A stretch of DNA of 64,000 nucleotides from Selaginella moellendorffii. Taxonomy: Eukaryota > Plantae > Lycopodiophyta. The position numbers and the translations under genes were made by a program. The notes beneath the pieces are model-generated. The model ran no database searches and was not told the origin of the DNA. It saw nothing but the letters and a program-made list of their open reading frames with translations. Positions 19,843 through 57,651 of the stretch are shown here, piece after piece (the stretch's first letter is position 1; every line of letters begins with the position of its first letter). The stretch is from positions 1,518,052 to 1,582,051 of the forward strand of contig NW_003314273.1 of the NCBI RefSeq assembly GCF_000143415.4, written 5' to 3'.

Positions 19843-21319
19843 TGTAAGCGACTAATTTTTCCATTTTACTTTAGTCACTTAACCACACCTCCGACCACTT
19901 GGAGGAGTCTCACTCACAACCTCCGTAAGTCCTATTTTTGACTTGGGCTTACTAGCCCCGAGAATGGCATCCCCACCACTCAACCTATGCACTTGGTCCA
20001 AGTGCTCCACGTGCCCGATCCCATGATCGACACCCCAAGGTACCACCAACATATCAGCCTGTTACGCTAAGGCCATGTCCATTCACCTTGGTCATAACGA
20101 TGGTCTGACACCACCTGCATCCTAGTCCCGTCACTCAAAGACTTGGCCATCCATCCATGAGTGATCATCCTAGATCCACTCTTTAGCATCCTTAGGGTGC
20201 CCACAAATATGGGGATTAGCCTTCCCCAATATCTCCATTCCAGTCCCCACCAAGTCCCTTTTCGTCCTTGGCCGTGCTCGCCAACACTGCCACTGGATCA
20301 AGGCCCACGGGCCCGACCACTAAGTCCCACTGTCCTCTAGGACTTCCTCCCTATATGACCGTGTCCTTGGTCACCACACCAGAGGACTACTCCTCTTCCT
20401 TTCCACAGTCTGGGACTTTGGGACGACATTTCGGAACACCGTGGCCCTACGCGGGCCTCGTGGGTACTCTCCCTGCCTTTCGCCTTTAGGTGCTCTAGCC
20501 ATAGGCTTAGAGCGAGGTTCCATTGAGCCACACTAGGTATCCAAGTAGGTAGTGCCACCCACACTTGGACTGGGAGCATCGGCCAGACGATCTCCCGGGG
20601 GAACTAGAGCCGGCTCTTGAACACTTCACCAAGCTACCCCGCTTGTCGATCCATGTTCACTCTAGTCTTGGACTTCCCAGTGGTCAGCTCATCACCCAAC
20701 ACTGGGTGCAGCCTCTTTGGGCCAAACTGGCCTTTCCTGGCCAAACTGGCTCCACTGCAGTCCTCCCCCTTACTATACTTTTGGAGCTCACCAAACCCCC
20801 CAGGGTCTGGGAGACGAACGCTTTGGGCTTTCACCCCTCAGACTCGAACTCGGACTCAGACTCGGACTCAGACTCGAACTCGGACTCAGACTCGGAGTCG
20901 GACTCGGACTTGGCCTCGGCCTCAGCCTCGGTCTCGGTCTCGACCTCGGACTCCATCTTGGATTCCGTCTTGGGTCCATCTCAGACTCCATCTCGGTCCA
21001 CCTCGGACTTCGTCTCGGACTCCATCTTGGATTCCGTCTCGGTCCATCTCGGACTCCGTCTTAGTCCACCTCGGACTCCATCTTGGACTCCTCCACGTGT
21101 CATGTGTTGGTCCTTTTGGGTCCCTTTATGGAGCCTCGCTTATTGCCCGCTTCATGCTCGTTCTTTGAGCACTCCGTTGGGAGTTCCACTCCCGCTCTCA
21201 ACCTCTCAAGTCGGAGCCTTTTAGTCCAAACGTGTTACGCTTGTTTGGCTTTTGCTTTGGCCACTACCACATGGCACCCTTTCGGCTCCACTTTGGGGCT
21301 TAGGGATTTGTGTCTCACA
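19843..21319 (-). repeat. 5' LTR of family A element
   Basis: TG...CA termini; adjacent PBS; matches 5755-7425. Confidence 0.92.
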
Positions 21320-39600: not shown

Positions 39601-42038
39601 TACATAAAATTCATTTATCCAATCCAAAATGCTCAAAACTTTCACCACTTCTAATTGTGTCTAAGAAATATAGCAATTTACAAGTTTGTGTAAATTATGA
39701 AAAGCTAAATGATGCAACAAAAAAAGATATGTTTTCTATTCCTTTCATAAATGAAATTCTGGATTTAGTAGTAGATCATGAAATGTATTCATTTTTTTAA
39801 TAGATTTTTGGGTTATATCCAATTCAAAGTAGCACTTGAAAATCAACACAAAACAACTTTTATAAGCCCATGAAGAATTTATGTCTATTGCAAAATACCT
39901 TTTGGTTTATGTAATGATCTTTTTATATTTCAAAGAGTTATTGTAAACACTTTTAAAGAATATTTCATTGATTTTATAAGAGTTTTCATAGATGATTTTA
40001 GTGTCTTCAACTCCAAAAAGGAACATTTAATATGCTTGCAAAAATATTTCCAAAAATATAGAGAATATAGCATTTCTTTTAATCTAGAGAAATGTAATTT
40101 TTTTGTAAATTCAAGCACACTTTTAGGTCATATTATATGCAAAAAAACATCCTTGTAAACAAAGATAAAATTCAAAAGATTGAGACAATGTTTTTACCAC
40201 ACAATTTAAAAAGTCTCTGTTTCTTTCTAAGTAAAGTTCGCTACCATAGGCAATTTATGAAAGCTTATATAAAGATTGTTAAGCCACTTACTGATCTTTT
40301 AAAAAAAAATACTCCATTTATATGGAATTTGTTTTGTTAAAAAGCAGTTTTAAGGCTTAAATAATGCATCAAAAAGACACTTATACTTATTAAGCCCAAA
40401 TGAACAAAAGAGTTTCACCTATAAGTGGATATTTTTGATATTGCTATAGATACAATATTGTTCCAGACACAAAGTGATTAAAAGGATCATGCTATCTACT
40501 ATGCTAGTAGACGTTTAAATCCTATTGAACATAATTACATAATGACTGAAAAAGAAGCCTTAAACATAATTTAAGCTTTACAAAAATGTAGACATTATCT
40601 TTTGGCAATAAAAGTAATTGTCTTTGTTGACTATAAGGCTCTTTTATAAGCCATATATATCTACTCGACTAACTAAATGATTTTTACTACTACAAAAATA
40701 TAACCTTAAAATAGTATAAAGATTTGAAAAATTCCATAAACAGGCCGATTGCCTAATCCGCATCACTACAAGAGAGTCACCTAATACTAAGGTAGAAAAA
40801 CTCCTATTTGTTCATTATTTGTAATTTTTATGCCTACCACTTGGTTAAAAGATATACAAATCTATTTTTGTATAGGCACTGTTCCACCCCATTATAACTC
40901 GCCAAAGAAAAAGAAATCATTTGTCTTGTAGACACAACTTTGCTCTGTCGTGGGGGAGCACTTATATAAATTAGGCATCGATAGAACACTAAGAAGATGT
41001 GTTAATAGGCAAGAAGAAAAAAATAAAATTCTAAAGGAAGCTCACTTATCCCCATTATAAAATCACAGTTAAAAAAGTCTTACAAGCAACGCTATGGTGG
41101 CCTATGCTTTGAAAAGATATAGCAATTTTATGTAAAAATTGTAATATTTACTAAAGGCATAAACTACCACCTAAAACAAAATCCATGAATGAAATCCTAA
41201 CTATTCATATGAAGCATTTCATAAATGGGGATTGGATTTTATGGGTCTTATGGTGACAAGAAGTAAGAGGAACAAATACATTTTAGTCGCCACTAATTAT
41301 GTGACTAAATGGGTAGAAGCTATACCTATAAAATAAACCTCAACCACTAACATTGCCAAATTCCTTTATGAAAACATCATTGTAAGATTTAGTTTGCATA
41401 AGGAGATCGTCACAGATAGAGACACCCATTTCATCAATGAAATAATAGAAATTCTTGTACAAAAATTCATTCTTAATCACAAAAAGTTTATGCCATATTA
41501 CCCACAAGGGAATAGTCAGGCTGAATCAACTAGCAAAGTGCTTAAAAACATCTTGAAAAAGATTGTAAAGGACAATTAAAAAGACTTTGATAAGGAAATC
41601 CTAGATGCTTTATGGGTTTATAGGACTACGTATAAAGTATTCATATGCATGACACCATCTCGTCTTACTTATGGCCAGGAAACTTTAATGCTTATGGAAT
41701 TTATAATTCCCTCTTTGCATATTGCAATTAAAAATGGCTTAGATGAAAAAGAAGCTCTTAAGTAAAAACTTGCCAAAATAGAAAACTTAAACAAGCTTAA
41801 GCTTAGAGCAATCTAGACCCTACACACAATTCAAAAAGCCAAAAATGCTAAACATGATAGACAATTGAAAATCATTTATAAGTTTAAGCCAAGAGATAAA
41901 ATCCTTTGGTATCAAAGCAAAATAGATATTCTTATAAACAAATTCAAGAGAAAATGAAATGCTCTCTAATTATTTTGTTTAAAATATTAACTCTAGGAAT
42001 GGATGAAGTGCATAACTTAAACGGGGATGATACTACAA
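36700..42038 (+). mobile_element. Heavily decayed, AT-rich Ty3/Gypsy element D (gag, RT, RH, IN remnants), related to element B; resumes at 54432
   Basis: WCTKCKNEGH knuckle near 38561; YKDIFAW...KGIPPE; FIDDFS; integrase WGLDF and YPQGNSQAE motifs. The left boundary is approximate. Confidence 0.8.
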
Positions 42039-42062
42039 AAGCTCTATTTCGTTAAAGTGGGA
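42039..42062 (+). repeat. Left terminal inverted repeat
   Basis: Exact reverse complement of 54408-54431. Confidence 0.95.
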
Positions 42063-43667
42063 TTTATTCAGTAAAATGGGACTAGGTACAAATTTTCAAG
42101 TATTTGAAAATGACGTGAAATTATATGTTTTTTGTCCAGGGGCTAGACATATCTGGGGCATGGTGACTAGCGCGGTGACTTTATGTCCAGACTGTGTCCA
42201 TCTGGTTGTATAATAAATCTCATTGTCAAGGTGAACAAGCCGAATCTGAAGCTAAAGAAGAGCGATGGCATGCGCGCACACACTATTTGTTTGTTCATTG
42301 AGCGTGTGGTGAGCTTTCCAAGATGAACGTCATTCCTATTAGCCAGACATATAACTTAATGGTGAGAACATTTAGATATTATTCAATGTTATCTTTTTCT
42401 AACGAATCTAATTGTGAAGGTGTAGCAAGAGGCATTGCTAGTCTGGAGAAGTCATTTAACTCATTTGACCCTTAGTGTATTTTCATGAAACTAAATAACA
42501 TTCATATTATTAAGGAATTTCTCTAGTACCTTTTTTTTACGACATAGAGGCTTGCATTTCTTTCAAAGGTGATTTAGTAAAAGGCCTGAGGGCACATGCC
42601 ATTCTATTTCTCAGACCGGTATTAAGATATACTAGTGCAAAGGGAAAAAGGTATTTGGTGATCAAGTAAATGGCATGAGGGCACACGCCATTATAAGCCT
42701 AAGCGCTAGTGGACACCTCCTTTTTGGTACTCTCAGTGGTACTATCATCCTTCTCCGGGTCAGTTGTTTTGCTTTGGATTGTTGTCTCTGATGTTACTGG
42801 GGCGTTCTCGATAGTTGTTAATGTTGCCGTTTGTTCAGAAAAATGATCACCTGGAGTATAGTACGGGGAGTTTGGAAGACTTATATATTCTACATCTTCA
42901 CCTATCTCCTTCTTCGTCTCCTTTTCTGCCTCACTTACAGATTTTGTGCTTGCCATGAGAACACTCTTCACCCTAAAATATGGAGTTCGTTGTGTTATAA
43001 AAGGAAACCAACACACACACTGCAAGGGAATGATGGTACATAAAGCACGTAAGCCCACAATATGGGTTTATGTGCCATTAATATGGGCCACATGCCATAT
43101 TATTAGATTTATGCACGTGTGATTGGTAAATGCATATGTCACATCATCTTTGTTTTACCTCACACACTATATCAGGCCTAATGAACCATATCACATGTGC
43201 GCACATGCTATATATATGGAGAAGTATTATGCAAGGATAGAAATTCAATGCATGATTGTGGAGAGCAATGGCATGAAGCCACATGCTAAATAACATTTTA
43301 GAGAAAGAATTAAAATAAAAACATGCAAACAGTACTAAGTGGACCAAGACTTAGAAGTGCACAATTGAATGAGGTATTTCTAATAAATACTTCACTCACC
43401 TCATATAGGAATGGCTACCACTCTCAAATGGCGTATCACCTCATGCCATCACCTCGCAATTTGTTATAACAATCCGATGAATTCATATTCGGCTTGTTCA
43501 CCTTGAACTTTAAGTAAGATTTGCTAGAACAACTAAGAATTTATACTTGTTATTTGTATCATCTCACCTAGGAATGGCGTAAGGCCACATGCCATCACGC
43601 CTCCTCTGATTTAGATTCGGATTGTTCACCTTGAAATAAAATACATTAGAAACTTAATAAAGGAATA

Positions 43668-46493
43668 TTAATGAATCTCACTTTGAACCCGGGTTATGAA
43701 TGCTCTTGCTGCATCTCTTGCATGGTCTGGCAAGGTGATGGTGGCACTCTGCTTCCGCATCCAACCATGCACAACATTATCCACCGATATGCTCATGCTG
43801 GGATCCCTTGGATTCAACACCCATCTCTTTTCTAGGCAATCCTTCGTATATTCGGAACTTGGCTTGAACCACTCCACAGTTACATTGAAGGAGTTAGTTT
43901 CCGCGTCCTCCTCTGCATCAGTGATGCAGCGCCCCACCTATATCATTTGTTTTTTATTACTGGGTCTGACAAGCACGACCATTCCTTTGCAGACCTGTAC
44001 TGGATTGAATGCTGAATCCGGCTTCTTGTTCCTCGGCCCACAATAGTGATCCTCAACATCGTTATCTGTCACTGCATTTCCAGAGGACATTGTTCCGCTA
44101 CTATCTGGTGCTCTGGGTTCTGGCCAAAAGGACTCTTCCAATTCTTCATATACAACCGGCCCATTTTGGATAGCAGATATAATCTTCTCCCAGTATTCGA
44201 GCAAAGGCTTGCACCTCTGAAAATAGGATTCTCCACCAAACACCAACCCCCTCTTCCAGAAGGCAATATGCTGTCTAATCCCGGCCACTATACTTTCCTG
44301 GTCTTTGAGTCCATCCGGGTGCATCGGCTGTGGGGAACCCTGAGGAATCATAGGTTCCCCAGTTATGGGATCTCTCTTGAAGAGTTCAATGCCGTCCACT
44401 GGCAGCCACACTGTGTCCCATTCTCTCATCTTGTACCTCATCACTGGAGCACCGTCACACATGCTGAAATGAAACTGAAGAGGCTTGGAGTGGCCAATCA
44501 GCGTTTCGAATCCGTCCCTGATGTAGCCTCTTACAAACCCCTTAAAGTTTGGAACCTCTGTAAGAAGTGCAGCTTCAACAGTGCCTTTGATGCAATTTTG
44601 GAATTCATCGTAGAGTTGTGGGAGGGTGAGGACATTGGATCACCGGAGGGACTCTGCCAGGTGACTGAACATGGCATCGACGTCTTCATGAGTGTGCCCA
44701 ACCATGAGAAAGCCAAGTGTAACCGTTTCAAATATGCCTTTGGCAACAAGCATCGCCAAGTACGCGAAGACGTACATGTTTTTGTTCTCACTGCCAGCAT
44801 TGTCTGTTTGGAGCAGAAGATGGGGTGGAAGGCCACATCGGCCGCAAGAACTTCCTTGAGATTCTGCTTCGTTTGGATGAGGCTGTGCATTCACCGGGCG
44901 ACCACCCTCGTCGGAATGGTATGAGGCCTCACGTGATAACCCTACAATCTGACGGCCAACATATTCACTGGGATGGCATGGGGCCCCACGCGATACTGCA
45001 AGCCTTTGCTCCTCCTCCAGCTGAACCCTGTATGGGGTTCGATCGACAAGGGCCTTATGCAAGGGTTCGCCGTTTAGCTCAGTCTGCGCACTTTGTAGAG
45101 ACCTTAAGTGTTTTGCTAGGGACGCAATCATCATGTTTGCACCCCCGCCACCCCATAGAGGTACAAAGAAGTTCCCATAGTTCTGGGCACCATGCCCATG
45201 AGCGATTATGCCAAACAGAGACACAGGCAGCTGCATGGATGAAGAGATTGCCTTGGGGGCAGGATTGAGTCGAGGTAAGCACGTCTTTTTCTGGTCCATT
45301 TTGTCGTGGATGATGCAGAGGTAAGAGTCAGGTCTCTCCATGGAGAGAATCCTGTTATGATAATATGCAGTCCTGCAACTTCTCTGCTCGATGTTGTGGT
45401 CGAGCCGCCTTCTAACCAACGTCTCTCGCTCTTGAGCGCTGCAAGAATTCTTCGACAAAGCCATTTTGATAGCAGTGCACTCGTCACACTTTGAAAAGCT
45501 GGAGTACTTTCCTATACTCACATCCCTGAACCTGTTGCTCCACAATCTACTAAATCTAGATTGGCTCAGCTTCCTGTAGCCATTACTCTGGAGTTCCCGA
45601 TTCACATCTTCCAATATGGCCCCCTTGGTATACATGGAAGGGAGAACTTGTTGGGTGTCTCGTGTTCCATCTTCCAAGAGGCGGGTTTTATGTGGTTGCT
45701 GCTCGCTACATGTCTCGATAAACCTCTTGAAGATTGCCTCTCTATATACAACATGACCCCTGGTTTTGTGCGTACCGTCGTTCCCATGGACTGCCTGTTG
45801 AACCCTTTGTTCCTCGAACTCAGTTTTGATTCTGTAGAATGTGGTTCGAGGGACTCCATAAATGATTCTCCATGCCTTCATGCAGACCAAACCCCTCTGG
45901 AAGACCATGCCCCCCACCTGATGTTCTGAAGCATCAACAGATGACCGTAATGCCTTATACATAAAATTGCGAGCTGCCATCCAGGACAATATCTTGTATC
46001 TTGCTCTCTCCTCTTCAATAGCATCCCAATCAGCATGCTGACAACACCTCCTCTTGCAACAAGCAACTGTCGAGACCATTCGAACCTCCATCGCCATTTT
46101 CTGCCTTTTCGGTTCGTTGCTCAGATCCTTTTGGCTGCGCTTTAGGAAGGTGTACTTTCTTTTCCCATGAAGAGATGTTCTGTCATCAGTTGTAGTGGTG
46201 TTTGATTGTGAATCCTTCACATTCTCAAACACTAAGTGCCTCAATTTCCACCGCACAATGCTTCCAATAATCAGACTATTTTCTTCTGTGTCAACAACCT
46301 CTAAAATCGCAACTCCAATATCATCCCAGCCCAATTCTTGATTAACAACCACATCTCTTGGATCGACAACTGTGGCTAAGCCCTCAGCTACCACCTCCCC
46401 CTCGGGGTTGTTTAGAAACACCTTCGCCTGAATCCATGTAGCACGGTTCTTAAGATCCACGGAGGGAACATGCATCGCACTTGCGGAGGCCAT
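43668..46493 (-). pseudogene. DDD-type transposase (~941 aa, Sola1-like motifs) with two in-frame stops
   Basis: ORFs 44640-46493, 43938-44462 and 43668-43937 are in one frame, separated only by TGA (44640-42) and TAG (43938-40). Motifs: FSKCDEC, IIHDKMDQKK, LQTDNAGSENKN, FLMVGHTHEDVDAMFS. A splice acceptor (TTTCAG) lies just before the ATG. Confidence 0.85.
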
Positions 46494-48398
46494 TCTGAAA
46501 GTGCAGAAAAGAAGTTAAGACCATACAAAAAATGATTGGAGAATGGCCTAAATCATAACATACCAAACAACCTCAATAGCATGAGGCCACATGCCATTAT
46601 TCAAACATGCTATTGACACCCATGTGAAATTTCGCATTCACAAAATTGGCATGAGGCCTCATGCCATCTTGATAAACACATAGCTACAAGTAGGTAAAGA
46701 AACTATTGGCAATATGCTAGTGATGAACTTGCAAGCCCCAAGATGGCATGAGCCCTCATACCATTAGTGGTACCGTAGCGCCACTCGCACCACCGCAACT
46801 GCTCGTAGCACCGCTCGCACAAACTGCCACTCGCATAAACTGTCGCTCGCAATGGCCCTCGCAATGCCGCAATCGCTCGTAGACGCATAAACCACAGCCC
46901 ACAACGCCGCTTACACAAGCAGCGCTCACTGCGCTCAGCGGAACCAAGAACACGGCGCACAAAAATGATAGACCTAGGAATGAGTTCGAGAATTCAAAAA
47001 TAACACACGCTTGAACGTCACATCAAATCCTCTGACAAACCAGATCTTATGATTCCTCTGACAAATTTCAAACTGAGTAGCGTCTAGACTTTGCTGTCGG
47101 AGGTTGAACTTTGTCACATCATGTCCTTGCCTCGATCCAGCTGTGCCATGTCAGTGATTCGAACTTTGCCATGCCATGTCAGCGATCCGCGCCAAGATTA
47201 TTCGCCGTGTAAAGGAATAATTATGCTGTGTGTGTACGTCCATTTATGGCAATATAAGGCCACACGCCATTTAAAGAATAATGCTAGTCGAACATTTTTT
47301 GGTGCATTTTTGGGTTTAAAATTGCATGAGCCCACACGCTATAAAGTTTACCTATACCAAAAATAGAAACAGCTTTATTTACTTGGGAATTTAAGTGGTT
47401 GAGGCATTTTTAAACTTACAAACACATGCCCTACTTACATTCCTTTGGTTGCTTAAAATTCAAAAATATTATAAACCTTTCTTTTTACATTTTGAATGTT
47501 TTCAATTATGGTTTTTGATTTTCGCAGGACCAGCCTAGTAACACGCCATTCAAGGAATAATGCCACAGGACGCCTGGATTTTTGGGTTTAAAATGTTTAG
47601 GGTTTTTTGGGTTTTTTCAAAATATTTTGGGTCCAACGTTTTTTGGGTTTCTTTGGTTCAAAATTGCATGAGCCCACACGCTATAATATTGATTTGAGAG
47701 AAAAATAGAAACAGATAGAATTTCTTTATTTAGCTGAACATCTGCCATTTTTGGAAATACAAGATGCTTTGGAATATCCAATCATGCATGGTATAAATAT
47801 AGTGAGGGTATTAAATGATATCCCAATCATGATCTTTCTTTTGGATTTCGCGTGCATGCAGTCCGAGGAATGATGACATTGCGGATTTCTTTTGGATTTT
47901 GCGTGCTTGCATGCGCGCGGCAATCCAGAAATTAATGGTGGCGCCCAAGTCTGAGGAATGATGACGTGGCGGGATTACCAACCGTTGTGACATTTCGCGC
48001 GTGTGAGGTTAGGTTTTGCATTTTGCTTCATACTCGCGCTCGCGCTCGCATCACACTCGCGCTCCCGCTCGCATCGCGCTCCCACTCGCGATCACACTCA
48101 CTTCTCTACAGGTTTCTCGTGTGCATCGGCGTCCACTCGCGCTTGCATCACACTCGCGCTCGCATCGCGCTCGTGTGCATCGGCGTCCACTTCAAGACAC
48201 ACCCAGTTTGTAACTTCGCCGCCAACTCCGCCGCCCACTCCGCCACCCACACGCAGCCCACTTGGCGTCCCGGGAGATTTCAGCACCACTCTCCAACTGT
48301 AAGTGGCAGAGTAGCCTTGCTGCTACGATCTGCTGCACATACAGTGCACATTCACCAGCGAGTCTGGCCTCGATTGTCACGCCTCCATTCGGCTTCAA
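46494..48398. promoter_or_regulatory. Putative bidirectional promoter/5' UTR region of the transposon, with two CpG-dense blocks
   Basis: Lies between the two divergent start codons; CTCGCG/CTCGCA-rich blocks at ~46775-46960 and ~47995-48270 flank an AT-rich core with duplicated segments. Confidence 0.55.
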
Positions 48399-51300
48399 AT
48401 GGTAAGTCTTTTAGGCCAAGTAGAAAATGGCATGAGGCCACATGCCATTCAGTAGCAACATTGGCATGCACTGATTGGGCTCTCGAGTGCAGTCCGGTTA
48501 CAGATGGCGTGTAGCCTCACGCCATCTTAGGATGCAGCCTCAAGACATCTGATGCAGTGGTGAATGGCGTGTGGCCTCACGTTATTTCCAGCTGCTAGTT
48601 TTTCATCTGTCAGCTCTAATTGTTGTGCATTTCTGAACAGGCGAGGAATTGCGTTCTTCTTCCAGCCACTGTCAATGTGGATGCAGAGAAGGGGGAGGAG
48701 CTCACCAGTTGGACTTTCGGGATGGAAGGCGAGGATCTGATGTTGTGCAACACAGATGGTGGGAGAAAAGAATGCATGGGGATCCTCATCCAAGTGACAG
48801 ACACTCCATGCAGTTCCATGCAAGAATATGGACTGGCACTTGTGGTAAAGACAGCGTCCGCCTTCAAGATCCACCTTGCACATCCTAGTGGCTTCCCGGA
48901 GGGGGGCAGCGGCTATGAGGAATTCCTAGAGGGAGCTAGGGAGAGGTTGTCCAGGAGGCCCACAATTTCAAAGACGCTGCGGGTCTATGAAGATCACATG
49001 GAATCCACGGACCTCACCTACGGCGATGTTCAAAAACTATATTCCAACATTGAGCCGTTGAGAGTGCCTCCAGTTCGCGAAGCGAAGGGGAAGGGGGTCG
49101 ATCTGGAAACTACCCCGAAGCAGAAAAGGGTGGTCAAGCTCAAGCCGACGTCCGACTCTGCTGCTCCAAAAAAGAAGCTACTCGGTGATGCCATTGCCTC
49201 AGGTTCGAACACTACACCCACCAAAAAGAAGAGCCGCAAAGAGCAGAAAGAGCAAGAAGAGGCAGCAAAAATCGTCGCAGATAATAGTACTTGTTACTAT
49301 TCCAACAAAGTATATACAATTGACGTGAGCCGTATCGACATCCAAAGCAAATACAACCACAGGCTAGTATCTGATGAGTGGGTGGAGAAACTGAAGCAGA
49401 AGATGCTGGCAAGTCCAGTAACACCCGACATCGCAGACGTGATCCCCTACTACCGAACAATGAAGGGCGAGACGAGGTTTCCAGACTTGATCAATAGGAA
49501 GGTGTTGGACGATCAGAACATCCGGTTCTATGCCGTCTCCGGGCAGCATTCTAGCTTGGCGATGCAACAGATAGTTGTGGATATTATGGTGGGCGAGGAG
49601 GTGAAGAAAGTCTTCAAGACAAGAGTTGTCCGCCTGATAAAAGGCAACTCGCCCCTCCAATCTATCATATACATCTCCCACGCGCAGAATGTCAAGCAAG
49701 AAACGTGCTACAAATCGGGTCTGCACGAGACATTGGCACGAACACGGAAGCTCTAGGTTCAACTGAAGAAGCCACAAAAACCAGGACAAGGACGTGCACT
49801 AGCAACTAGCGCCTGGCAGGTAAGCCTCGTTGCATGTGGCATAGCATGTGGCCTCACGCCATTTCCATTGCAGGAATTCTCGAGTCTTCTCTCGAAAACA
49901 CTGGGGGTCAATGACACACTCAGCATCCATAACATTCTACTCGCGACAAAAGTTGTTTTTGACAAATGGGTAGATGTGCTGAGGAGGTACCATGACGGGG
50001 AGTTGCTAAACTCAATGGGTGTGGAGGACGGCCGGAAGCCCAATGATTTGAAGCTCAATGCTTTGTGTTTCTCACGGTCTCTAAGCGACGACGACCTTCT
50101 GACAGTGGCTAATGCTCTTCTACGTGGTGAGGTAGTCTTCAACAAGACCAAAATGACTCCCGGCCATATTGTGACATACGAGGACTTGTGCACGACTCTG
50201 AGAGCTCGTGCGCTATTGAAGGATTGGATCTTCGAGCAAGTGGCCGTGGAGAGGGTGAGCATCGACACCACGCAAGAGATGATGGAAGAGCTGGAGTTGT
50301 CAAATGAAGACATCGACGAGTACGTGAAGGGGGCCCCCAAGTTCATTAATCTGCTGCGGGATGCCACGAAAAGTAAAGCTGAGAAGTTGGATCAGTATCC
50401 AAATTTCATTAAGAGGGATGTCGACCGCCGGCTTCAGAAACAGCTCGACCCCGCAGCAGAGGCCTATCGAGAACCTTACCGGGTATACGTGAATTCGGAT
50501 GAGGATCATAGGTGGAGGAGCATCGTTTCCCGCGGAGATGAGCAGGTCAAGAACATCTTTTGTGTGATGGACTTCACAAACGAGGAGATCACTCATGCAG
50601 ACGAAGTCAGCTCCATCATTGACTTAATGGTGGGACTTGCGGAGGTGGAATCTTCAGTCCACTATATGATCTACGACTCCGAATCCTATCACAAGTTCTG
50701 GAAGGCCTTGAACGAGGTGAAGGCTCGGTTAAAAGGCAAGGAGATGCGGGAGATCCATGGGATAATGGCTAAGAAGAAGATACCGACGAATGTCCACATC
50801 TTCACACTCGCCCTTGTTATTGGTCCTGCAGCAGAGTGGGACTGGAGTGACTTCCCAGCTTCGTTCAACAAGGCCGATCGAATTGATCTGAGGGAGGTCA
50901 ATTTACCTGTGCCTGAGGAACTGAAGACGGCTATGGAGCTTTCGAATCCAAAGAAAGCTCCAGGTGCAGCATGGGAAATGCTCAGCTGGGTCTTCAACGC
51001 AATAGCGAGTGACTCCAAGGGCAAATGCGTTGTCGAGTACAACTGCGGCGGACTATTCTTTCGAGCCGCACTACTCAAGGGTGTCCCGTGTGTTGCGGTG
51101 ACAAACTCCATTGAAGAGGTGACTTCAATGGAGCATATAATTATAGTTGCCAAAGAAAAACAGTATCTTCTCTGCGAACCTGGTGAGTACGCACTTTAAG
51201 TTTAAATGTTATCTCACAAGCTCTGTATGCAGGAGCATGGCCACCCCCAGATGCTGAAACGGCGTTAACAGCTACTGATGTTAGGCCGAGCTCACAACCT

Positions 51301-53989
51301 GCAATAGGTAAGGTCACGTGAGGCCTCACGCCATTTTGATTATAGATCGTTGTGAATATTCAGACACGAGGACTGAAAAGCACACTGGTGGCACGTCGAA
51401 GAAGGACAAACAGACAAGCAATAGGAAAAAAGGAGGTACAAATTATATTTGCAATGGCGTGTGGTCTCATGCCATTCCTTGCAGGAGACACTTCTTCAAA
51501 GGCAAAACAGGCAAGCACCAGCCAAGCTCAAACTGACAGTGGTCATAAAAAGCGAAAGCACGTTGGACAGTCGTCGGGATCAGAGGCGTTTGATTCGAAA
51601 AGGAAGAAGGGCAACGAAAAGATGATAGGTAATGCCTCGCGGTTATGGCGTGTGTGCTCATGCCATTCATTGCAGATCAAGGGCTGAGTGAAAGGAGCCA
51701 GTCACCACCTCCTGACTCAGATTCCTATGGCAGACTCCCCTTCCCCAATCTCAATGGAGAGGTACAATGGATGAGGGATGCTTTTCAAGTCAGGGCCACG
51801 TTTTTCTCATCTCGTCGTCTTCGAAGGGTGCAAGAACGTGCAGAAACCATGTTAAGACAGTCGGGTGAGGATACGGTCCTAGGTCAAGCACTAAAACAGG
51901 CTATGGATGTCTTGTATTTTGAGATGGAGACTCGGCCAGATGATTTTCCCAAGATGGTCCTGGAAGAACAAGCCATCCAGCCTGAGCAGCCTATGGAAGA
52001 AATACAGGAGGGGGATGAGGAGCCAGAGAAAGATAATGAGTAGGAAGAGCAGAAGGACGAAGAGGAGGACAAAGAAGAGGAGGACGAAGAAGAGGACGAA
52101 GAGGACTTGGATGGTCCTCACAATGGTGACGATCACAATAACGACGACGACGATGATGACGACGATGGCCAGCCTGAGGTGGCCAAAGAGCAGCGGAGGA
52201 AGGTCATACAAGACAAACCATCAGGTAAATAATAGTACATCCATTCCTAACCTTTTACCATTTCTAACATTGTCCATGTAGGTCGCAGAGCAAATGGTAA
52301 GTAGAGATTATTCAGTTGAATTAAGATACAAACTCTAGCCTTTAGTGTCGAGGAAGGATAGTGCCAAGCAAGGGTCGAAACGTATGTCCAATCTTTCAGA
52401 ATCAGCAGTGCGCCCAAGTGATATCGGTCCTAGTTCCTCAATAGCAGTTGATGGTAAATACAGTATAGTCGATTCAATGTGCTAATGAGTTTGTTTTTAA
52501 TAGCCAGTAGGGAGGATACCATCTCAATCGAAGGGAGATATTTGGACATGCATATGGATCCGCCAGTGGACTCTACTTGCCTGCAAGAGTCATCAGAGCT
52601 GGTGGAGGTTACTATCCATATCAACGCCAAGCAAGCTGACCACGCTCCACTTGATGCTGCCCATACCACTGACTCAATCTTGTCCACGTATCCAACTGAC
52701 GGTGACCAGGCGCCATTGGACCCGCATGAGGCCGCCCCAGCCGCCGAGCCGGTCGTATCCTCATTTCCAACGTGTGCCCAATCGTTTGACTACGCGCCGT
52801 TGGAACCTCCCTACACCGCCCCTGCTGCCTGTTCGGTCATGTCCACTTTGCCAACGGAGGCACCAACTGAAATGGCGTGTGATCACACGCCATCGGAACC
52901 ACCCCATGCCACTGTTGAGCCAGTTGTACCAGAGTCTACAGCTGAAATGGCATGTGCCCACACGCCATCGGATGCGATTGACCCCACATTGTAGAGGAGA
53001 GTATTTCCGCCCTTCACGTTTCCTCGACCAAAACCCTCTCAACGACCATCGGGAGCACCATTCGCTAATATTGTAGATGGTAAAATTGACTTGTACTATT
53101 TTTTATGCTGACGCATTTCATTTCAGAGTCACGGCGAAGGTACTATATCGTTTTTGATCTGAACGGTGTCCTTTTCTCCCATGAGCGTGGCTCGTCCTCG
53201 AATGTCACTGCACCCTCCAAAGCCTGCGGTCGCAAGTTGGTCAAAAGAGACAGATTCACATTAATCACACGGGAGAAACTGCGGGATCTAATAATGACCA
53301 TGCGACACTTAAAACAGAGGGCCGGGTTCAATTTGCAATTGGGAGTTTGGACATCCATGATGCGCCACAATGCATTAACGTTGCTACAGATGATGCACGA
53401 TCAGACGCGAGTAATATTACCATTTGACTTTCTCCTAACGCAGGAGGATTGCTTGACTATGGTCCATGTGAGGGGTAGCAAGCCCATCTTCGTCAAGCCA
53501 GAGGCTGTAGTGATGAACCGGATTGTTAGGTCAAGTGAAATCCTCATCATCGATGACTCGTCGATTAAAACTGCAGCGAACACGCACACATATGCAGTGC
53601 ACCCCATCTCTTGCAGTATGGAAACTAGGGAGAAGAAACCGTATGTTCTGGGGGACCTTGCAAAACGGCTTGGAGCGATGGTGATAGAGAACTGGCCAGT
53701 CCAGGAGGTGGCTGCAGAAATCAACCAAATGGCAGATGGAACGGTATATCAGAAGCCATTTGATCGGACAGACACCAGTCATCATTTATGGCATGTATAT
53801 TGTCTAGCCAAGCACTATCCGCATCTCCATAATCTACTCAACTGAATGGGTTCTTCGACCACTGAACATGAGCGTGGACGTATTAGAGAAGAGATGGCAT
53901 TACTATTGGGTTTAAATCCTGATAGTGTGGAGAGTGATGAAATTCCAAGATTATTGTATAGGCGTTGGAGGCAAAAAATAACAGTCTGA
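48399..53989 (+). pseudogene. 11-exon transposon cargo gene (~1600 aa): ParB/Srx-like domain, degenerate amino-MTase-like fold, basic/acidic low-complexity linker, FCP1/NIF-type HAD phosphatase
   Basis: Exons 48399-401, 48641-49819, 49874-51182, 51233-307, 51364-435, 51485-628, 51676-52224, 52282-296, 52346-453, 52504-53079, 53127-53845 (probably to 53989). All introns are GT-AG and the frame is kept. Stops at 49754, 52041, 52992, 53843. Motifs: FYAVSGQHSSLA; VVEYNCGG...AALLKG; IVFDLNGVL, GVWTS, IIDDS. Confidence 0.75.
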
Positions 53990-54407
53990 GATGGCATGTA
54001 TTTATTTAAAAATGTAACTTATTATGGCATGGGGTTCCATGCCATTGTATTAATATTAAAAGACAATTCTTTGAGAGGATTTGCATTATACTAGAAGTGT
54101 TACAGCATGTTATTGGAAGTCTATGAAGTTGTTTTATTAATAAGGGGAAAGTAAAGATTGAATGGGGATTTGGGCTCCACCTAGACTCGGAACAACTGAG
54201 CCAATATTAAAAGGATGGAAAGAAATTGGACGACGATGACAAGGAGAAGAGAGAGGTGAAGCAGTGGCAGAGGGAGGAGAAGTGATTGAGTAGACATTTC
54301 CTTGTTTAAAATAAAATGGCATGTGCCTCAATGCAGTTGAATTTTGTTATATTTATATACTATATAAAGGTTTGGAAACCTTATTTTACAAGTGGGATAA
54401 TGACAAT

Positions 54408-54431
54408 TCCCACTTTAACGAAATAGAGCTT
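54408..54431 (-). repeat. Right terminal inverted repeat
   Basis: TCCCACTTTAACGAAATAGAGCTT. Confidence 0.95.
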
Positions 54432-55403
54432 ACAATAGTAAATTTAAATTGTTTAAGAAAGTACCATGAAGATATAAGCATAAATATTTTTTATATCTTA
54501 GGGTGCAAAAATATGGATAATCTCATAAATAAAGCCCTCGCAAGGATTTATCGTTAAAGAGGGCCTTTTATTTTCCAGCAAAACACCAAAAGATTGGGTG
54601 TAGTTTTATTAGACACAAAACTAGCAAAGAGCCTTTATCTAGAGGGGCCTACTATGGAAGTTCCTATGGAGAGGGGGCTTGCTTGTGAATTGGATCCCGA
54701 AGGTTTGCCTAGATGTGTCACCTAGAACCATTCATCTAGTGGTGTCCACATCCATTCTCGAGTACCTACATTCTCTTGCTTCCATAAGAAATGCCAGATC
54801 TGTGCTTCTTTCTTAGCTTTTTCTGGACTATTTTGCCCTCCTCTCTTTTCCAGTTGTAGAACATGGGCTGCTGTTGTAGTAATCATTCTGGTCCACACCC
54901 GTGACACCACCATCTTCGATCCTTCATGTTTGTAGCGCATGTGGTTTTGACCCTTTATCCTATGGTGATTTACCATAGGATAACACCACGAAGCGGAACC
55001 TAAACCCTCTTTGTGCCACGTGACAGATGCCACGTGTCACATGCCACGTGTCCATAGGAACCCAAGGTTTAGGGCCTTGGGCCACTGAACGAAGGAACAG
55101 TGCCAAACTCCCAAGCGTGAAGCCAAAGAGTGGTGGAACTGAACCACGGAGCAACTCCTGAGCATATAGCCCAAGGAGCGAAGGAACAAGAGCCTGGAGC
55201 GACTTGGAACAGTCCTGGAGCAACTAGCATCCCAATGCCAGGACCAACACACAAAATGGAGCCAAACGGAGTCTGGCGCTATTTCAGCATATCGGTGGCC
55301 TAACGCGAGGATATGGGTACTCCACAAGCTAGCATGGTGTGGAACTTGGGCTTAGACCCAAGCCGGACGCATAACAAGGACAAGCACGCAAGCGGGAGCT
55401 AGA

Positions 55404-57651
55404 TGTGAGACACAAAATCCCTAAGCCCCAAAGTGGAGCCGGAAGAGCGCCACATGGTAGTGGCCGAAGCGAGAGCCAAACGAGCGTAACACGTTTGGAC
55501 CAAAACCTCCGACTTGAAAAGTCAAGAGCGGGAGTGGAACTCCCAACAAAGTGCTCGAGGAATAAGCACGAAGCGAGCAATAAGCGAGGCTCCAAAAAGG
55601 GACCCAAAAGGACAAACACATGACACGTGGAAGTGTCCGAGATGGACCCGAGATGGAGTCTGAGATGGAGTCCGAGATGGAGTCTGAGATGGACCCGAGA
55701 TGGAGTCCGAGATGGAGTCCGAGATAGACCCAAGATGGACCCGAGATGGAGTCCGAGATGGAGTCCGAGATGGACCCGAGATGGACCCGAGATGGAGTCC
55801 GAGATGGAGTCCGAGATGGAGTCCGAGATGGAGTCCGAGATGGAGTCCGAGATGGACCCGAGATGGACCGGAGATGGAGTCCGAGATGGAGTCCGAGATG
55901 GACCCGAGATGGACCCGAGACCGAGACCGAGGCCGAGACTGAGGCCGAAGCCGAGACTGAGACCAAGTCCGAGTCCAAAACCGGGACCGAGACCGAGTCC
56001 GAGTCCGAATACAAATACAGGCAGTTGGGTGAAAGCCCAAAGCGATTGTCCCACAGGGGGGGTGTAAGCTCCTGAGTTTGGACTTCCCGGGAGGTCACCC
56101 AGCCCAGTACTATTCAAACCCAAGGACGCTTAACTCCAACTATCCCAAGACCCTTAACCGATTGGAAAAGGGGGTGCACTCTTGTTCATGGGCCCTTTCC
56201 CTCTATATTTGAACCCCATGGATCGTCTCTCGAGTCGTTCCCTTTGGTTGCTTACAATCCACCACGCTTCCCTGCAAGTTCACGCCCTCGTGAACGGAAG
56301 CTGAGAGCCGCAGCTCTCCCGAGAGCCTCGCTCTCTTGACACCCTACCCCTCGGGTCGAGCCCAGCGGGAGCAAACTGGACCAGCCAGATGTCAATCAAC
56401 ATGTGGTGTGATTCCCTTAGCCAACCAACAGAGTCGGACCCGAGACCCCTCTGATACCAAATGTAAGCTCCTGAGTTTGGACTTCCCGGGAGGTCACCCA
56501 GCCCAGTACTATTCAAACCCAAGGACGCTTAACTCCAACTATCCCAAGACCCTTAACCGATTGGAAAAGGGGGTGCACTCTTGTTCATGGGCCCTTTCCC
56601 TCTATATTTGAACCCCATGGATCGTCTCTCGAGTCGTTCCCTTTGGTTGCTTACAGGGGGGAGGGGGCTGCCGGGGGTTCCAAAAGTATAGTAGGGAGAG
56701 TGTGGGGGTTGGAGCCCAATGGAGCCAGTTTGGCCAGGAAGGGCTAGTTTGGCCCAGGAAAGGCCAGTTTGGCCCAGGAAGGCCATACCCAGTGTTGGGT
56801 GATGAACTGACCACTGGGAAGTCCAAGACTAGAGTGAATACAGACTGACAAGCGGGGTAGCTTGGTGAAGTGTTCAAGAGCCGGCTCTAGTTCCCTTGGG
56901 AGATTGACTGGCCGATGCTCCCAGTCCAAGTGTGGGTGGCACTACCTACTTGGATACCTGGTGTGGCTCAACGGAACCTCGCTCTAAGCCCATGTCTAGA
57001 GCACCCAAAGGCGGAAGGCGGGGAGAGTACCCATGAGGCCCGCGTAGGGCCATGGTGTTCCAAAATGTTGTCCCAAAGGCCCAGACTATAGAAAGGAAGA
57101 GGAGTAGTCCTCTGGTGTAGTGACCAAGGATACAGTCGAGTGGTGAGAAAGTCCTATAGAACTGTGGGACTTAGTGGTCAGGCCTGTGGGCCTCGATCCA
57201 GTGGCAGTGTTGGTGAACACGGCCATGGGCAGAAAGGGACTTGGTGAAGACCGGAAAAGGGATATTGGGGAAGGCTATTCCCCATGTCTGTGGGCATCCT
57301 AAGGATGCTAAGGAGTGGATATGGAATGATCACTCTTGGACGGATGGCCTAGTCCTTGAGAGATGGGATTGTGATGCAGGTGGTGTTAGACCTCTGGTGT
57401 GACCAAAGTAAAGGGGCATGGCCTTAGCGTAACGGGCTGATATGTCGGTGGTACCTTGGGGTGTTTATCATGGGATCAAACACATGGAGCACTTGGATCA
57501 AGTGCAAAGGTTGAGTGGCGGGGATGCCATTCTCGGGGCTAGCAAGCCCAAGTCTGAAATAGGGCTTATGGAGGTTGTGAGTGAGACTCCTCTAAGTGGA
57601 TGGAGGTGTGGTTAAGTGACTAAAGTATAATGGAAAATTTAGTCGCTTAAA
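55404..57651 (+). mobile_element. Solo LTR, family A (opposite orientation to 5755-7425), containing a Cassandra TRIM
   Basis: Reverse complement of LTR A; perfect TSD CTAGA (55399-55403, 57652-57656). Confidence 0.9.
56063..56655 (-). mobile_element. Complete Cassandra-type TRIM (593 bp)
   Basis: Two apparently identical 194-bp LTRs (56063-56256, 56462-56655) with a 5S rRNA-like core; 205-bp non-coding interior; PBS TGGTATCAGAG; PPT-like GCGTGGTGGAT; TSD GGGGG. Confidence 0.93.

What the first reader, a model, noticed from the sequence alone, without database searches (positions are those of the whole stretch)
42039..54431. Candidate new system: Sola-like DNA transposon encoding a ParB-like multidomain protein plus its own array of parS-like palindromes
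Seen: exact TIRs, a 4-bp TSD, an in-frame reconstructable empty site, a transposase, a divergent large cargo gene, and about 25 copies of a 22-bp palindrome found only between the TIRs. Known: bacterial ParB loads at palindromic parS sites and spreads along DNA; Arabidopsis VANDAL elements encode VANC proteins that bind short motifs in their own non-coding regions and introns to counter silencing. Inferred: the cargo protein recognises the palindromes and delivers a chromatin or transcription-modifying activity to its own element, either anti-silencing or transpososome assembly. I know of no described Sola element with this architecture.
Basis: partly seen in the sequence, partly recalled or inferred. 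Interest (0 to 1): 0.93.

Follow-up and report, generated by a model that had tools for sequence, protein, structure and literature searches.

The report
Two-gene DNA transposon studded with palindromes
This is a decayed 12.4-kb cut-and-paste transposon whose non-coding DNA carries 24 copies of its own 24-bp palindrome beside a second gene with a ParB-like fold, but relatives that lack this gene have their own palindromes, so the palindrome is probably a self-recognition tag of the whole transposon lineage.

Summary
The element spans 42039-54431, with TIRs exact for 24 nt and a 4-bp ACAA duplication. An independent deleted copy ends at the same base. The 24-bp dyad AATGGCRTG-WGGCCW-CAYGCCATT occurs 24 times inside and never in the other 51.6 kb.

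The transposase (Pfam DUF7869) and the divergent multi-exon gene each carry two in-frame stops, so this copy is dead.

The ParB reading is right at fold level only. A model of the conserved exon matches almost only ParB, Noc, KorB and sulfiredoxin. No sequence family is hit, and the ParB arginine motif is replaced by GQHS. The C-terminal NIF-like phosphatase domain has DLNGV in place of DxDx(T/V).

None of 80 related transposase loci encodes this gene. Yet 14 of the 53 with enough upstream sequence carry arrays of their own 22-26-bp palindromes upstream of the transposase, against 0 of 53 shuffled controls. Many share a GGCC core.

The gene's few homologues elsewhere also sit among palindromes of their own, so a role for it is not excluded.

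Most likely the palindromes are lineage-specific sites for an element-encoded dimer, probably the transposase. I rate this a new variant of a known kind.

The parts
42035..42038 (.). Left copy of the 4-bp target-site duplication (ACAA)
   Evidence: Read directly; matches 54432-54435.
42039..42065 (+). Left terminal inverted repeat, AAGCTCTATTTCGTTAAAGTGGGATTT
   Evidence: I2: 27 nt, 96% complementary; first 24 nt exact. The independent copy L001 ends at this same base.
42264..43596 (.). Left-arm cluster of 6 palindrome copies (starts 42264, 42580, 42669, 43267, 43427, 43573), downstream of the transposase coding frame. Also holds an inverted duplication, 42226-42287 against 43573-43634.
43704..46493 (-). 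Transposase pseudogene (Pfam DUF7869). It has a Cys-rich CCx3CC segment, an HTH-like segment and conserved Asp residues D397, D564 and D604/D606. In-frame stops lie at 44640-44642 and 43938-43940.
44915..44995 (.). Two degenerate palindrome copies inside a lineage-specific, poorly conserved insert of the transposase, between the first and second conserved Asp
46494..48398 (.). Divergent intergenic (promoter) region with 5 palindrome copies (starts 46575, 46645, 46742, 47320, 47662), a roughly 340-bp duplication and CTCGCA-rich tracts
48399..48401 (+). Proposed start codon of the second gene, immediately followed by a GTAAGT donor
   Evidence: Inferred because homology to P0009 extends upstream of the first in-frame ATG of exon 2.
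48402..48640 (+). Intron 1 (239 nt) with 3 palindrome copies (starts 48426, 48503, 48563)
48641..49819 (+). Exon 2: N-terminal region, Lys-rich linker and the ParB/sulfiredoxin-fold domain (about 49295-49819). In-frame TAG at 49754-49756. The exon ends ..AWQ|GTAAGC at the intron position that homologues share (..WK|GT).
49820..49873 (+). Intron 2 (54 nt), made of a donor, one palindrome (49840-49863) and an acceptor 10 nt further on
49874..51182 (+). Exon 3: a domain of unknown fold, conserved with the exons downstream of the cargo homologues in L004, L005 and L086
   Evidence: The AlphaFold model is unusable (pLDDT 37).
51308..51363 (+). Intron 4 (56 nt) with one degenerate palindrome (starts 51312)
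51436..51484 (+). Intron 5 (49 nt) with one palindrome (51453-51476); acceptor 8 nt after it
51629..51675 (+). Intron 6 (47 nt) with one palindrome (51644-51667); acceptor 8 nt after it
51676..52224 (+). Exon 7, ending in an acidic tract, with an in-frame TAG at 52041-52043
52871..52969 (.). Two palindrome copies in a 75-bp duplication within a Pro-rich open frame (52479-52994) whose coding status is unclear
53127..53845 (+). Last large exon: NIF/FCP1-like HAD phosphatase domain whose first motif reads FDLNGVL instead of DxDx(T/V)
   Evidence: (PF03031, 7.7e-5, 22.9 bits against a 21.8 cut-off).
54023..54338 (.). Right-arm palindrome copies (starts 54023, 54315)
54405..54431 (-). Right terminal inverted repeat
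54432..54435 (.). Right copy of the target-site duplication (ACAA)

Best explanation
The feature is a dead copy of a two-gene cut-and-paste DNA transposon. Its transposase belongs to the DUF7869 clade and has a conserved Asp triad; the element makes a 4-bp TSD, which makes it Sola-like. Shown: the 24-bp dyad AATGGCRTG-WGGCCW-CAYGCCATT fills nearly all non-coding space of the element, namely both arms, the divergent promoter region and five of the short introns of the second gene. Shown: analogous lineage-specific 22-26-bp palindrome arrays, often with a GGCC core, recur upstream of DUF7869 transposases that have no second gene. Inferred: the palindromes are double-stranded DNA binding sites for a dimeric protein encoded by the element. 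They would work as a self-recognition code that separates cognate copies from the rest of the genome. Inferred: the binder is most probably the transposase, through its N-terminal Cys-rich and HTH-like region. It is the only protein shared by all palindrome-bearing relatives. Binding would serve autoregulation or re-activation of the divergent promoter, and possibly assembly of the two ends. Inferred, weaker: the second protein (ParB/sulfiredoxin fold, a central unknown domain, nuclear-localisation-like basic exons, an acidic tract and a NIF-like pseudo- or variant phosphatase) is an accessory factor of one sub-lineage. It would act on the same tagged DNA, either by binding the palindromes itself or by recruitment, and would modify transcription or chromatin there.
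For: The motif is confined to the element and far above chance. Copies avoid coding sequence: 2 of 24 fall in 55% of the element (p = 2e-6). The constraint pattern is dyad-symmetric at the DNA level. C6 and G19 are kept in 23/24 and 22/24 copies while positions 7 and 18 vary freely. The 7-18 pair is not compensatory (A/C 8, A/T 7, G/T 4, G/C 4). This fits half-site recognition, AATGGCRTG, by a dimer rather than a hairpin. RNA folding of the four palindrome-bearing short introns gives z-scores of +0.45, +0.11, -2.98 and -2.02, so no consistent structure. Fourteen of 53 related transposase loci have at least 3 similar palindromes within 3 kb upstream, against 0 of 53 shuffled controls (sequences). 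L023 has 10 copies on both sides of the ORF, with 0 expected. No cargo homologue is found in any of the 80 loci. The outer arms differ between lineages while a GGCC-type core recurs (L030, L055, L056, L074, L068, L073 and the window). The transposase has an invariant Cys cluster, and the segment around ..AW..I.G.S...FYRYK gives sub-threshold HTH hits. Precedent: transposases and transposon accessory proteins that bind motif arrays in their own non-coding DNA and re-activate cognate copies (VANC, PMC5735166; AtMu1 transposase and Spm TnpA, bioRxiv 10.64898/2026.08.24.746577).
Against: No binding was measured, so the binder is inferred only from co-occurrence. The palindrome half-site has no similarity to the TIR. 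The transposase would therefore need a second specificity, or the palindromes do not serve end recognition. Most related loci are short or decayed metagenome contigs 28-43% identical to the window transposase, so a diverged or off-contig second gene cannot be fully excluded. Cargo homologues on contigs with no detectable transposase (L086, L003, L005, L087) are also surrounded by their own palindromes, which equally fits the cargo being a binder. The central W..W asymmetry follows gene direction (8:1 against 0:5, p = 0.003), and a symmetric dimer site does not explain that.
Confidence: 0.5

Rival explanations
1. The ParB-like cargo protein is the specific reader of the palindromes, a eukaryotic ParB-parS-like or VANC-like pair. 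It loads on them and delivers its phosphatase-like or other activity to its own element.
For: The ParB/Srx fold is supported by two structure libraries, and several hits are ParB, Noc or KorB proteins that bind palindromes. Every contig with a cargo homologue has its own GC-rich palindromes. L086 has 18 copies with 0 expected, including a 26-bp-period array at the 5' end of the gene and two copies in the intron after the ParB-like exon. L003, L005 and L087 have one to three in that same intron. L086 shows no transposase similarity in the 2.4 kb upstream of the gene.
Against: Relatives with a transposase and no detectable cargo gene carry equivalent arrays. In ParB proteins the sequence-specific contacts come from the HTH domain, not the N-terminal fold (established knowledge), and no HTH could be shown here. 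The arginine motif used for CTP binding is absent, replaced by GQHS/GQHT. The cargo family is tiny: five real hits among 1.84 billion representatives.
Confidence: 0.25
2. The palindromes act at the RNA level. As hairpins in introns and untranslated regions of both transcripts, they would help or regulate splicing of the 47-56-nt introns, or act as a tag for an RNA-binding factor.
For: Four of five short introns consist of little more than a donor, one palindrome and an acceptor 8-28 nt downstream. The central asymmetry reads the same way on the sense strand of both divergent genes (p = 0.003). Two introns fold better than shuffles (z = -3.0 and -2.0).
Against: There is no compensatory maintenance of pairing: 8 of 24 copies have an A/C clash at pair 7-18. 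Two palindrome introns fold no better than shuffles. Intron 3 is equally short (50 nt) with no palindrome. In relatives the arrays lie in tandem upstream of the transposase ORF, at 47-bp spacing in L023 and 26-bp spacing in L086, which looks like promoter-side DNA rather than intron sequence.
Confidence: 0.1
3. The palindromes have no function for the element. They would be a selfish or slippage-prone mini-repeat that spreads within the element by duplication or gene conversion, like the palindromic elements that insert in frame into Rickettsia genes, or they would be binding sites for a host factor.
For: Some copies lie in duplicated blocks: 47320/47662 are identical, 52871/52946 lie in a 75-bp duplication, and 42264/43573 lie in an inverted duplication. 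Copies occur in frame inside open frames (44915, 44972, 52871, 52946). One relative's palindrome has a CACGTG core typical of host bHLH/bZIP sites (L012).
Against: There are no copies in the other 51.6 kb of the window. The trait recurs across transposases only about 30% identical, each lineage having its own sequence, which argues for maintained co-evolution with an element-encoded factor. Constraint on specific half-site positions persists despite CpG decay.
Confidence: 0.1

Closest known systems
Sola superfamily of eukaryotic DNA transposons (Sola1-3; as summarised in PMC10741241)
   Same: Terminal inverted repeats, a 4-bp target-site duplication, a DDD-type transposase, a size within the reported 2-15 kb range, and occurrence in non-flowering plants.
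   Different: Similarity to reference Sola transposases could not be tested; the only family hit is Pfam DUF7869. In the papers I could search, no Sola element is described with a second ParB-fold gene or with element-wide palindrome arrays.
VANDAL (Mutator-like) elements with VANC anti-silencing proteins (PMC5735166; PMC10398659)
   Same: An accessory gene beside the transposase. A short motif accumulates in the element's own non-coding regions and introns. Motif sequences diverge between lineages.
   Different: A different transposon superfamily. The motif is a 24-bp dyad rather than a short asymmetric motif in tandem repeats. The accessory protein has an unrelated architecture (ParB/Srx fold plus NIF-like). 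Here the motif arrays also occur in relatives without the accessory gene.
En/Spm (CACTA) TnpA with subterminal 12-bp motifs, and transposases acting as sequence-specific regulators (bioRxiv 10.64898/2026.08.24.746577)
   Same: Multiple binding motifs near the ends and the promoter, some in inverted pairs, are read by an element-encoded protein that controls transcription and epigenetic state of cognate copies.
   Different: Here the motifs also fill internal introns. There is no homology to TnpA. The binder is unknown.
Bacterial ParB-parS, Noc-NBS and KorB-OB systems
   Same: A ParB/Srx-fold N-terminal domain, and the target is a 16-24-bp palindrome present in several copies on the replicon that encodes the protein.
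   Different: No significant sequence similarity. The GxxRxxA/GERR arginine motif is absent. An HTH is not demonstrated. The setting is a eukaryotic nuclear, intron-containing gene fused to a NIF-like domain. Copy number and placement (introns, promoter) are unlike a partition site.
PIF/Harbinger two-gene transposons (transposase plus a Myb-like DNA-binding protein)
   Same: Two genes, one of which may supply DNA recognition and recruit the transposase.
   Different: The proteins are unrelated, the TSD is 3 bp, and no palindrome arrays are known (from my own knowledge).

Membership tests
Sola superfamily DNA transposon | 4-bp target-site duplication | tested here: met
   ACAA at 42035-42038 and 54432-54435. 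The element end is confirmed by the second copy L001.
Sola superfamily DNA transposon | Terminal inverted repeats (11 bp to over 1 kb reported) | tested here: met
   27-nt TIR, first 24 nt exact.
Sola superfamily DNA transposon | DDD catalytic triad in the transposase | tested here: inconclusive
   D397 and D400, D564, and D604 and D606 are invariant in 7 homologues that are 31-47% identical to the window. Their catalytic role is inferred from conservation only; no structure was made.
Sola superfamily DNA transposon | Sequence similarity to reference Sola1, Sola2 or Sola3 transposases | not testable with these tools
   No Repbase or published Sola sequences could be reached. Pfam gives only DUF7869 and DUF8039.
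ParB/Srx superfamily | ParB N-terminal / sulfiredoxin fold | tested here: met
   AlphaFold model from alignment A1 (pLDDT 66, pTM 0.61). In the PDB, nearly all of the top ~40 Foldseek hits are ParB, Noc, KorB, PadC, Srx, SbnI or Atu1540 (E from 5e-3, probability up to 0.99). In BFVD, ParB/Spo0J/Srx proteins dominate, with 6 hits at E <= 1e-3.
ParB/Srx superfamily | Significant sequence match to a ParB-type family model | tested here: not met
   No Pfam, NCBIfam or PDB sequence hit for the exon, its homologues or their profile. The only trace is a 0.13 E-value touch of DUF6551 in P0011.
Canonical ParB (CTP-dependent DNA clamp binding parS) | Arginine-rich nucleotide-binding motif (GxxRxxA / GERR box) | tested here: not met
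   The equivalent segment is (A/V)(I/V)(S/D)GQH(S/T)xxAA in the window and all four homologues that cover it, with no Arg. The identity of the ParB motif is from established knowledge.
Canonical ParB (CTP-dependent DNA clamp binding parS) | Helix-turn-helix domain after the N-domain that reads the palindrome | tested here: inconclusive
   Helices follow the core in the model, and some ParB hits align over 150-198 columns but at rmsd 10-13 A. The next exon could not be modelled (pLDDT 37).
Canonical ParB (CTP-dependent DNA clamp binding parS) | Specific binding of the protein to the palindrome | not testable with these tools
   Needs EMSA, DAP-seq or ChIP.
FCP1/SCP (NIF) CTD-phosphatase-like HAD family | Match to Pfam NIF above the gathering score | tested here: met
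   PF03031, E = 7.7e-5, 22.9 bits against a 21.8 cut-off. This is marginal. HAD-IIIC scores 0.017.
FCP1/SCP (NIF) CTD-phosphatase-like HAD family | Catalytic DxDx(T/V) motif | tested here: not met
   The motif reads FDLNGVL, with the second Asp replaced by Asn. The NIF ORF near a related transposase (L078) reads FNLNGVL. The family motif is from established knowledge.
VANC-type anti-silencing system | Motif enriched in the element's own non-coding regions and diverging between lineages | tested here: met
VANC-type anti-silencing system | Accessory protein homologous to VANC, with loss of methylation at bound copies | not tested
   No VANC sequence was compared. Pfam returns only NIF for the cargo pieces. 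Methylation data are not available.
ParB-DNA methyltransferase fusions (beta-class N6/N4 methyltransferases) | Methyltransferase motifs IV (DPPY) and I (FxGxG) with a significant family match | tested here: not met
   A motif-I-like string is seen by eye (window VVEYNCGGLFFRAALL; L086 VLDFFSGGMGLKAALLEH). There is no Pfam, NCBIfam or PDB support, and the DPPY position reads DFTN/EFSA.

The most novel reading that the evidence does not exclude
A eukaryotic DNA transposon lineage has evolved a ParB/Srx-fold accessory protein that reads a lineage-specific palindromic code written into every non-coding part of its own element, including introns reduced to little more than the binding site. It would use this code to direct a transcription- or chromatin-modifying activity, such as a CTD-phosphatase-like module, to cognate copies. 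That would be a eukaryotic counterpart of ParB-parS and an anti-silencing system independent of VANC.
Probability: 0.2. Interest if true: 0.85.

Novelty: new variant of a known kind. Interest (0 to 1): 0.62.

Why it matters
Motif arrays that let an element-encoded protein recognise its own copies have been worked out mainly in a few flowering-plant systems (Spm TnpA, VANDAL VANC, AtMu1).

This clade is poorly known: it is Sola-like, and its only family assignment is a domain of unknown function. Here the same logic seems to be written far more openly, as long dyad-symmetric sites whose outer arms change from lineage to lineage around a recurring GGCC core.

That gives a ready set of natural cognate and non-cognate pairs for testing how transposons keep self-recognition specific.

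The second gene is the first case I could find of a ParB/sulfiredoxin-fold domain inside a eukaryotic cut-and-paste transposon, and it is fused to a degenerate CTD-phosphatase-like domain. If it acts on the tagged DNA, it would be a new type of transposon accessory factor.

The 47-56-nt introns built around a binding site also show how strongly such sites can be retained in a compact element.

Tried and rejected
1. Word-indexed homologue searches with the two large cargo exons found nothing. Only the exhaustive search gave five weak true homologues, plus one spurious repeat protein, P0008.
2. Sequence searches of the cargo pieces, homologues and profile against the PDB, Pfam and NCBIfam gave no significant hit except NIF.
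3. The idea that exon 3 is a degenerate beta-class DNA methyltransferase, as in bacterial ParB-methylase fusions, came from a motif-I-like string. It has no statistical support, and the AlphaFold model was unusable (pLDDT 37), so I did not send it to a fold search.
4. I looked for a shared N-terminal domain between transposase and cargo. BLASTP gave E = 0.38 and the alignment was unconvincing.
5. TIRs could not be identified in the long related loci, so I cannot say whether their arrays are subterminal.
6. RNA-hairpin reading: there is no compensatory pattern and folding z-scores are inconsistent.
7. Rfam found nothing in the window.
8. A scan of viral contigs with the transposase alignment found no relative. 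The cargo alignment was too divergent for that tool.
9. The reference Sola papers were not retrievable.
10. Host identity was not established. The clues are 47-56-nt GT-AG introns, relatives on contigs of JGI metagenome series that I recall, unverified, as peat-moss-associated, one of which carries a PPR gene, and a UniParc protein 96% identical to the transposase.

Full report
**The observation**

The element is real and its limits are exact. A 27-nt inverted repeat with one mismatch, and with its first 24 nt exact, lies at 42039-42065 and 54405-54431. It is flanked on both sides by ACAA.

Contig L001, from a public sequencing run, holds a second copy that is 97% identical. That copy lacks window 42173-44603 and ends at the very same terminal base, followed by a different flank, AAAG. 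A UniParc protein 96% identical to the transposase shows a third copy.

The palindrome ATGGCATG-N6-CATGCCAT occurs 22 times at up to 3 mismatches, all between 42265 and 54337, with 0.40 expected in the window. With the fuller consensus AATGGCRTG-N6-CAYGCCATT there are 24 copies inside and none in the remaining 51.6 kb.

The rest of the window is retrotransposon debris with RVT_1 and gag fragments.

Rejoining the flanks gives an 86-codon open frame across the junction. It lies in AT-rich DNA and has no paralogous empty site in the window, so it carries little weight.

**The transposase**

One frame on the minus strand, from 46490 to about 43704, is colinear with 1060-1074-aa homologues at 35-36% identity.

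- It hits Pfam DUF7869 at 9e-30.
- Its homologues also carry DUF8039.
- Invariant residues include a Cys cluster, the D397/D400 pair, D564 within (Q)xDN, and GHTHxDxD with D604 and D606.
- A segment around FYRYK gives only sub-threshold HTH hits.

This copy has in-frame stops at 44640-44642 and 43938-43940, so it is a pseudogene.

The 4-bp TSD, the TIRs and an Asp triad fit what is written about Sola elements (PMC10741241). I could not reach any reference Sola sequence, so superfamily membership stays untested.

**The second gene**

It is transcribed divergently from the transposase. Reading GT-AG sites and frames gives this model:

| Feature | Coordinates | Notes |
|---|---|---|
| Start codon | 48399-48401 | Abuts a GTAAGT donor |
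| Intron 1 | 48402-48640 | 239 nt |
| Exon 2 | 48641-49819 | |
| Intron 2 | 49820-49873 | 54 nt |
| Exon 3 | 49874-51182 | |
| Three small basic exons | between 51233 and 51628 | Separated by introns of 50, 56, 49 and 47 nt |
| Exon 7 | 51676-52224 | Ends in an acidic tract |
| Uncertain stretch | 52225-53126 | Structure not resolved |
| Last large exon | 53127-53845 | |

The intron after exon 2 sits where the homologues have theirs..WK|GT. In-frame stops at 49754-49756 and 52041-52043 show that this gene is broken too.

**What the second protein is**

The two big exons found nothing in the word-indexed search. The exhaustive search of 1.84 billion representatives returned five true but weak homologues, with E from 4.5e-6 to 1e-3. 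They share the block ..R..S..HV..L...M...P..ADViPY...iRF.AISGQHSaeAAK.

No sequence library recognises this block. An AlphaFold model built on the alignment (pLDDT 66, pTM 0.61) does find a clear fold:

- In the PDB it matches almost only ParB, Noc, KorB, PadC, sulfiredoxin, SbnI and Atu1540.
- In the viral library it matches ParB/Spo0J/sulfiredoxin proteins, six of them at E <= 1e-3.

The ParB/Srx fold is therefore supported. The arginine motif that ParB uses for CTP is not present; the segment reads GQHS or GQHT, closer to the DGQHR-type branch of the superfamily as I recall it.

Exon 3 is conserved with the exons downstream of three homologues. It could not be modelled (pLDDT 37). My impression of a degenerate methyltransferase motif I has no statistical support.

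The last exon matches Pfam NIF marginally (22.9 bits against a 21.8 cut-off). Its first motif is DLNGV rather than DxDx(T/V), so it may be inactive or altered.

**Anatomy of the palindrome**

The consensus is a full 24-bp dyad, AATGGCGTG-WGGCCW-CACGCCATT. Four properties stand out:

1. Only 2 of 24 copies lie in the 55% of the element that is coding (p = 2e-6). Both of these sit in a lineage-specific insert of the transposase.
2. Each half-site contains a CpG. C6 and its mirror G19 are kept in 23 and 22 of 24 copies, while positions 7 and 18 vary freely (A 15, G 8; C 12, T 12). The constraint is symmetric about the dyad.
3. Pair 7-18 shows no compensation: A/C 8, A/T 7, G/T 4, G/C 4.
4. The central W..W is asymmetric in a way that follows gene direction. 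A..A occurs 8:1 up to 48426 and T..T 5:0 from 48503 on (Fisher p = 0.003). I cannot explain this.

Properties 2 and 3, together with inconsistent RNA folding z-scores, point to recognition of double-stranded half-sites by a dimer rather than to a hairpin.

Four of the five short introns are little more than a donor, one palindrome and an acceptor 8-28 nt downstream. Intron 3 is just as short and has no palindrome.

**The decisive comparison**

A metagenome scan with the transposase alignment confirmed 353 relatives, and the best 80 loci were kept. None of those 80 has a detectable homologue of the second gene by tblastn, phmmer or a profile of alignment A1.

Many nevertheless carry arrays of their own 22-26-bp palindromes just upstream of the transposase:

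| Locus | Palindrome |
|---|---|
| L012, L016, L018 | GGAAATCTAGCACGTGCTAGATTTCC |
| L023 | CCCACGGGTGAACACCCGTGGG (10 copies, both sides of the ORF) |
| L002, L007 | AGGCTCAAACTYRAGTTTGAGCCT |
| L056, L074 | AAATGCCTAGTGGCCACCAAGCATTT |
| L073, L075 | GAAAATTGGGTRGCCRCCTAATTTTC |
| L030, L055, L068 | Further variants with a GGCC or GGTC core |

Of 53 loci with at least 600 bp of upstream sequence, 14 have three or more similar palindromes. None of the shuffled controls does. The palindrome array is therefore a trait of this transposon clade. Its outer arms are lineage-specific and a GGCC-type core recurs, which the window shares.

The transposase is the only protein common to all these loci, so it is the most economical candidate for the binder.

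The contigs that carry homologues of the second gene also have palindromes of their own.

- L086 has 18 copies of TCGCAACGCSGCGTTGCGA, with none expected. These include a 26-bp-period array at the 5' end of the gene and two copies in the intron after the ParB-like exon. It shows no transposase similarity in the 2.4 kb upstream of the gene.
- L003, L005 and L087 have one to three GC-rich palindromes in that same intron.

These contigs are too short to show what element they belong to. The data therefore show two associations, transposase with palindromes and second gene with palindromes. Only in this window are all three seen together.

**Comparison with known systems**

The logic resembles En/Spm TnpA with its subterminal motifs, VANDAL VANC (PMC5735166) and transposases acting as sequence-specific activators of cognate copies (bioRxiv 10.64898/2026.08.24.746577). 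The resemblance to bacterial ParB-parS is in fold and in the use of palindromes only.

I found no description of a ParB-fold gene in a eukaryotic cut-and-paste transposon, nor of palindrome arrays in Sola-like elements, in the searchable literature. That library lacks most subscription-journal papers.

**Verdict**

The feature is a dead copy of a two-gene, Sola-like transposon that carries a lineage-specific palindromic self-tag.

- The tag is probably read by the transposase (confidence about 0.5).
- It is possibly read, or also read, by the ParB-fold accessory protein (about 0.25).

I rate it a new variant of a known kind, with interest 0.62.

Noticed in passing
window 9439-10230(-), 11824-13212(-), 27800-28993(-), 32838-33620(-): Fragments of LTR retrotransposons (RVT_1, Retrotrans_gag, zf-CCHC) fill much of the window outside the element, so the transposon sits in a repeat-rich region.
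   Followed up: partly
window 55400-56000; also 60186-60786, 6830-7428, 20867-21319: A repeat of about 600 bp just right of the element recurs at least three more times in the window at 80-84% identity, in the opposite orientation at each of the three. Its family was not identified.
   Followed up: no
window 47254-47345 and 47540-47690: A duplication of about 340 bp in the divergent intergenic region carries two identical degenerate palindrome copies (starts 47320 and 47662).
   Followed up: no
window 42226-42287 vs 43573-43634, and 42226-42250 vs 43482-43506: An inverted duplication within the left arm (62 nt at 74%, with a 25-nt core at 96%). Each arm includes a palindrome copy.
   Followed up: no
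window 46760-46950 and 48020-48200: CTCGCA/CGCTCGC-rich low-complexity tracts flank the divergent promoter region on both sides. Their function is unknown.
   Followed up: no
window 49820-51675: All five introns in this stretch are 47-56 nt long, and from intron 3 onward all are phase 1. Introns this short hint at a host with very compact introns; the host was not identified.
   Followed up: partly
window 42264-54338 (palindrome positions 10 and 15): The central W..W of the palindrome is A..A on the transposase side and T..T on the other side, so it reads the same on the sense strand of both divergent genes (p = 0.003). A symmetric binding site does not explain this.
   Followed up: partly
L078 5197-5595 (and L077): A NIF-domain ORF (Pfam 4.9e-8) lies 4.4 kb upstream of a distant DUF7869 transposase. 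Like the window's NIF-like exon it has xLNGVL in place of DxDx(T/V). It could be a host gene or a remnant of a related accessory gene.
   Followed up: partly
L018 14539, 15368, 16256: Three identical copies of GGTGATAATGATGATTATCATC and 44-nt AT-rich inverted repeats lie downstream of the transposase. This may be a different nested repeat.
   Followed up: no
L086 2194-2524: Thirteen palindromes stand in a strict 26-bp tandem period at the 5' end of the cargo homologue. The gene caller read them through as an N-terminal extension of the protein.
   Followed up: partly
L034 1-110: A 34-bp tandem repeat holding two interleaved palindromes lies at the contig end, upstream of a DUF7869 transposase.
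   Followed up: no
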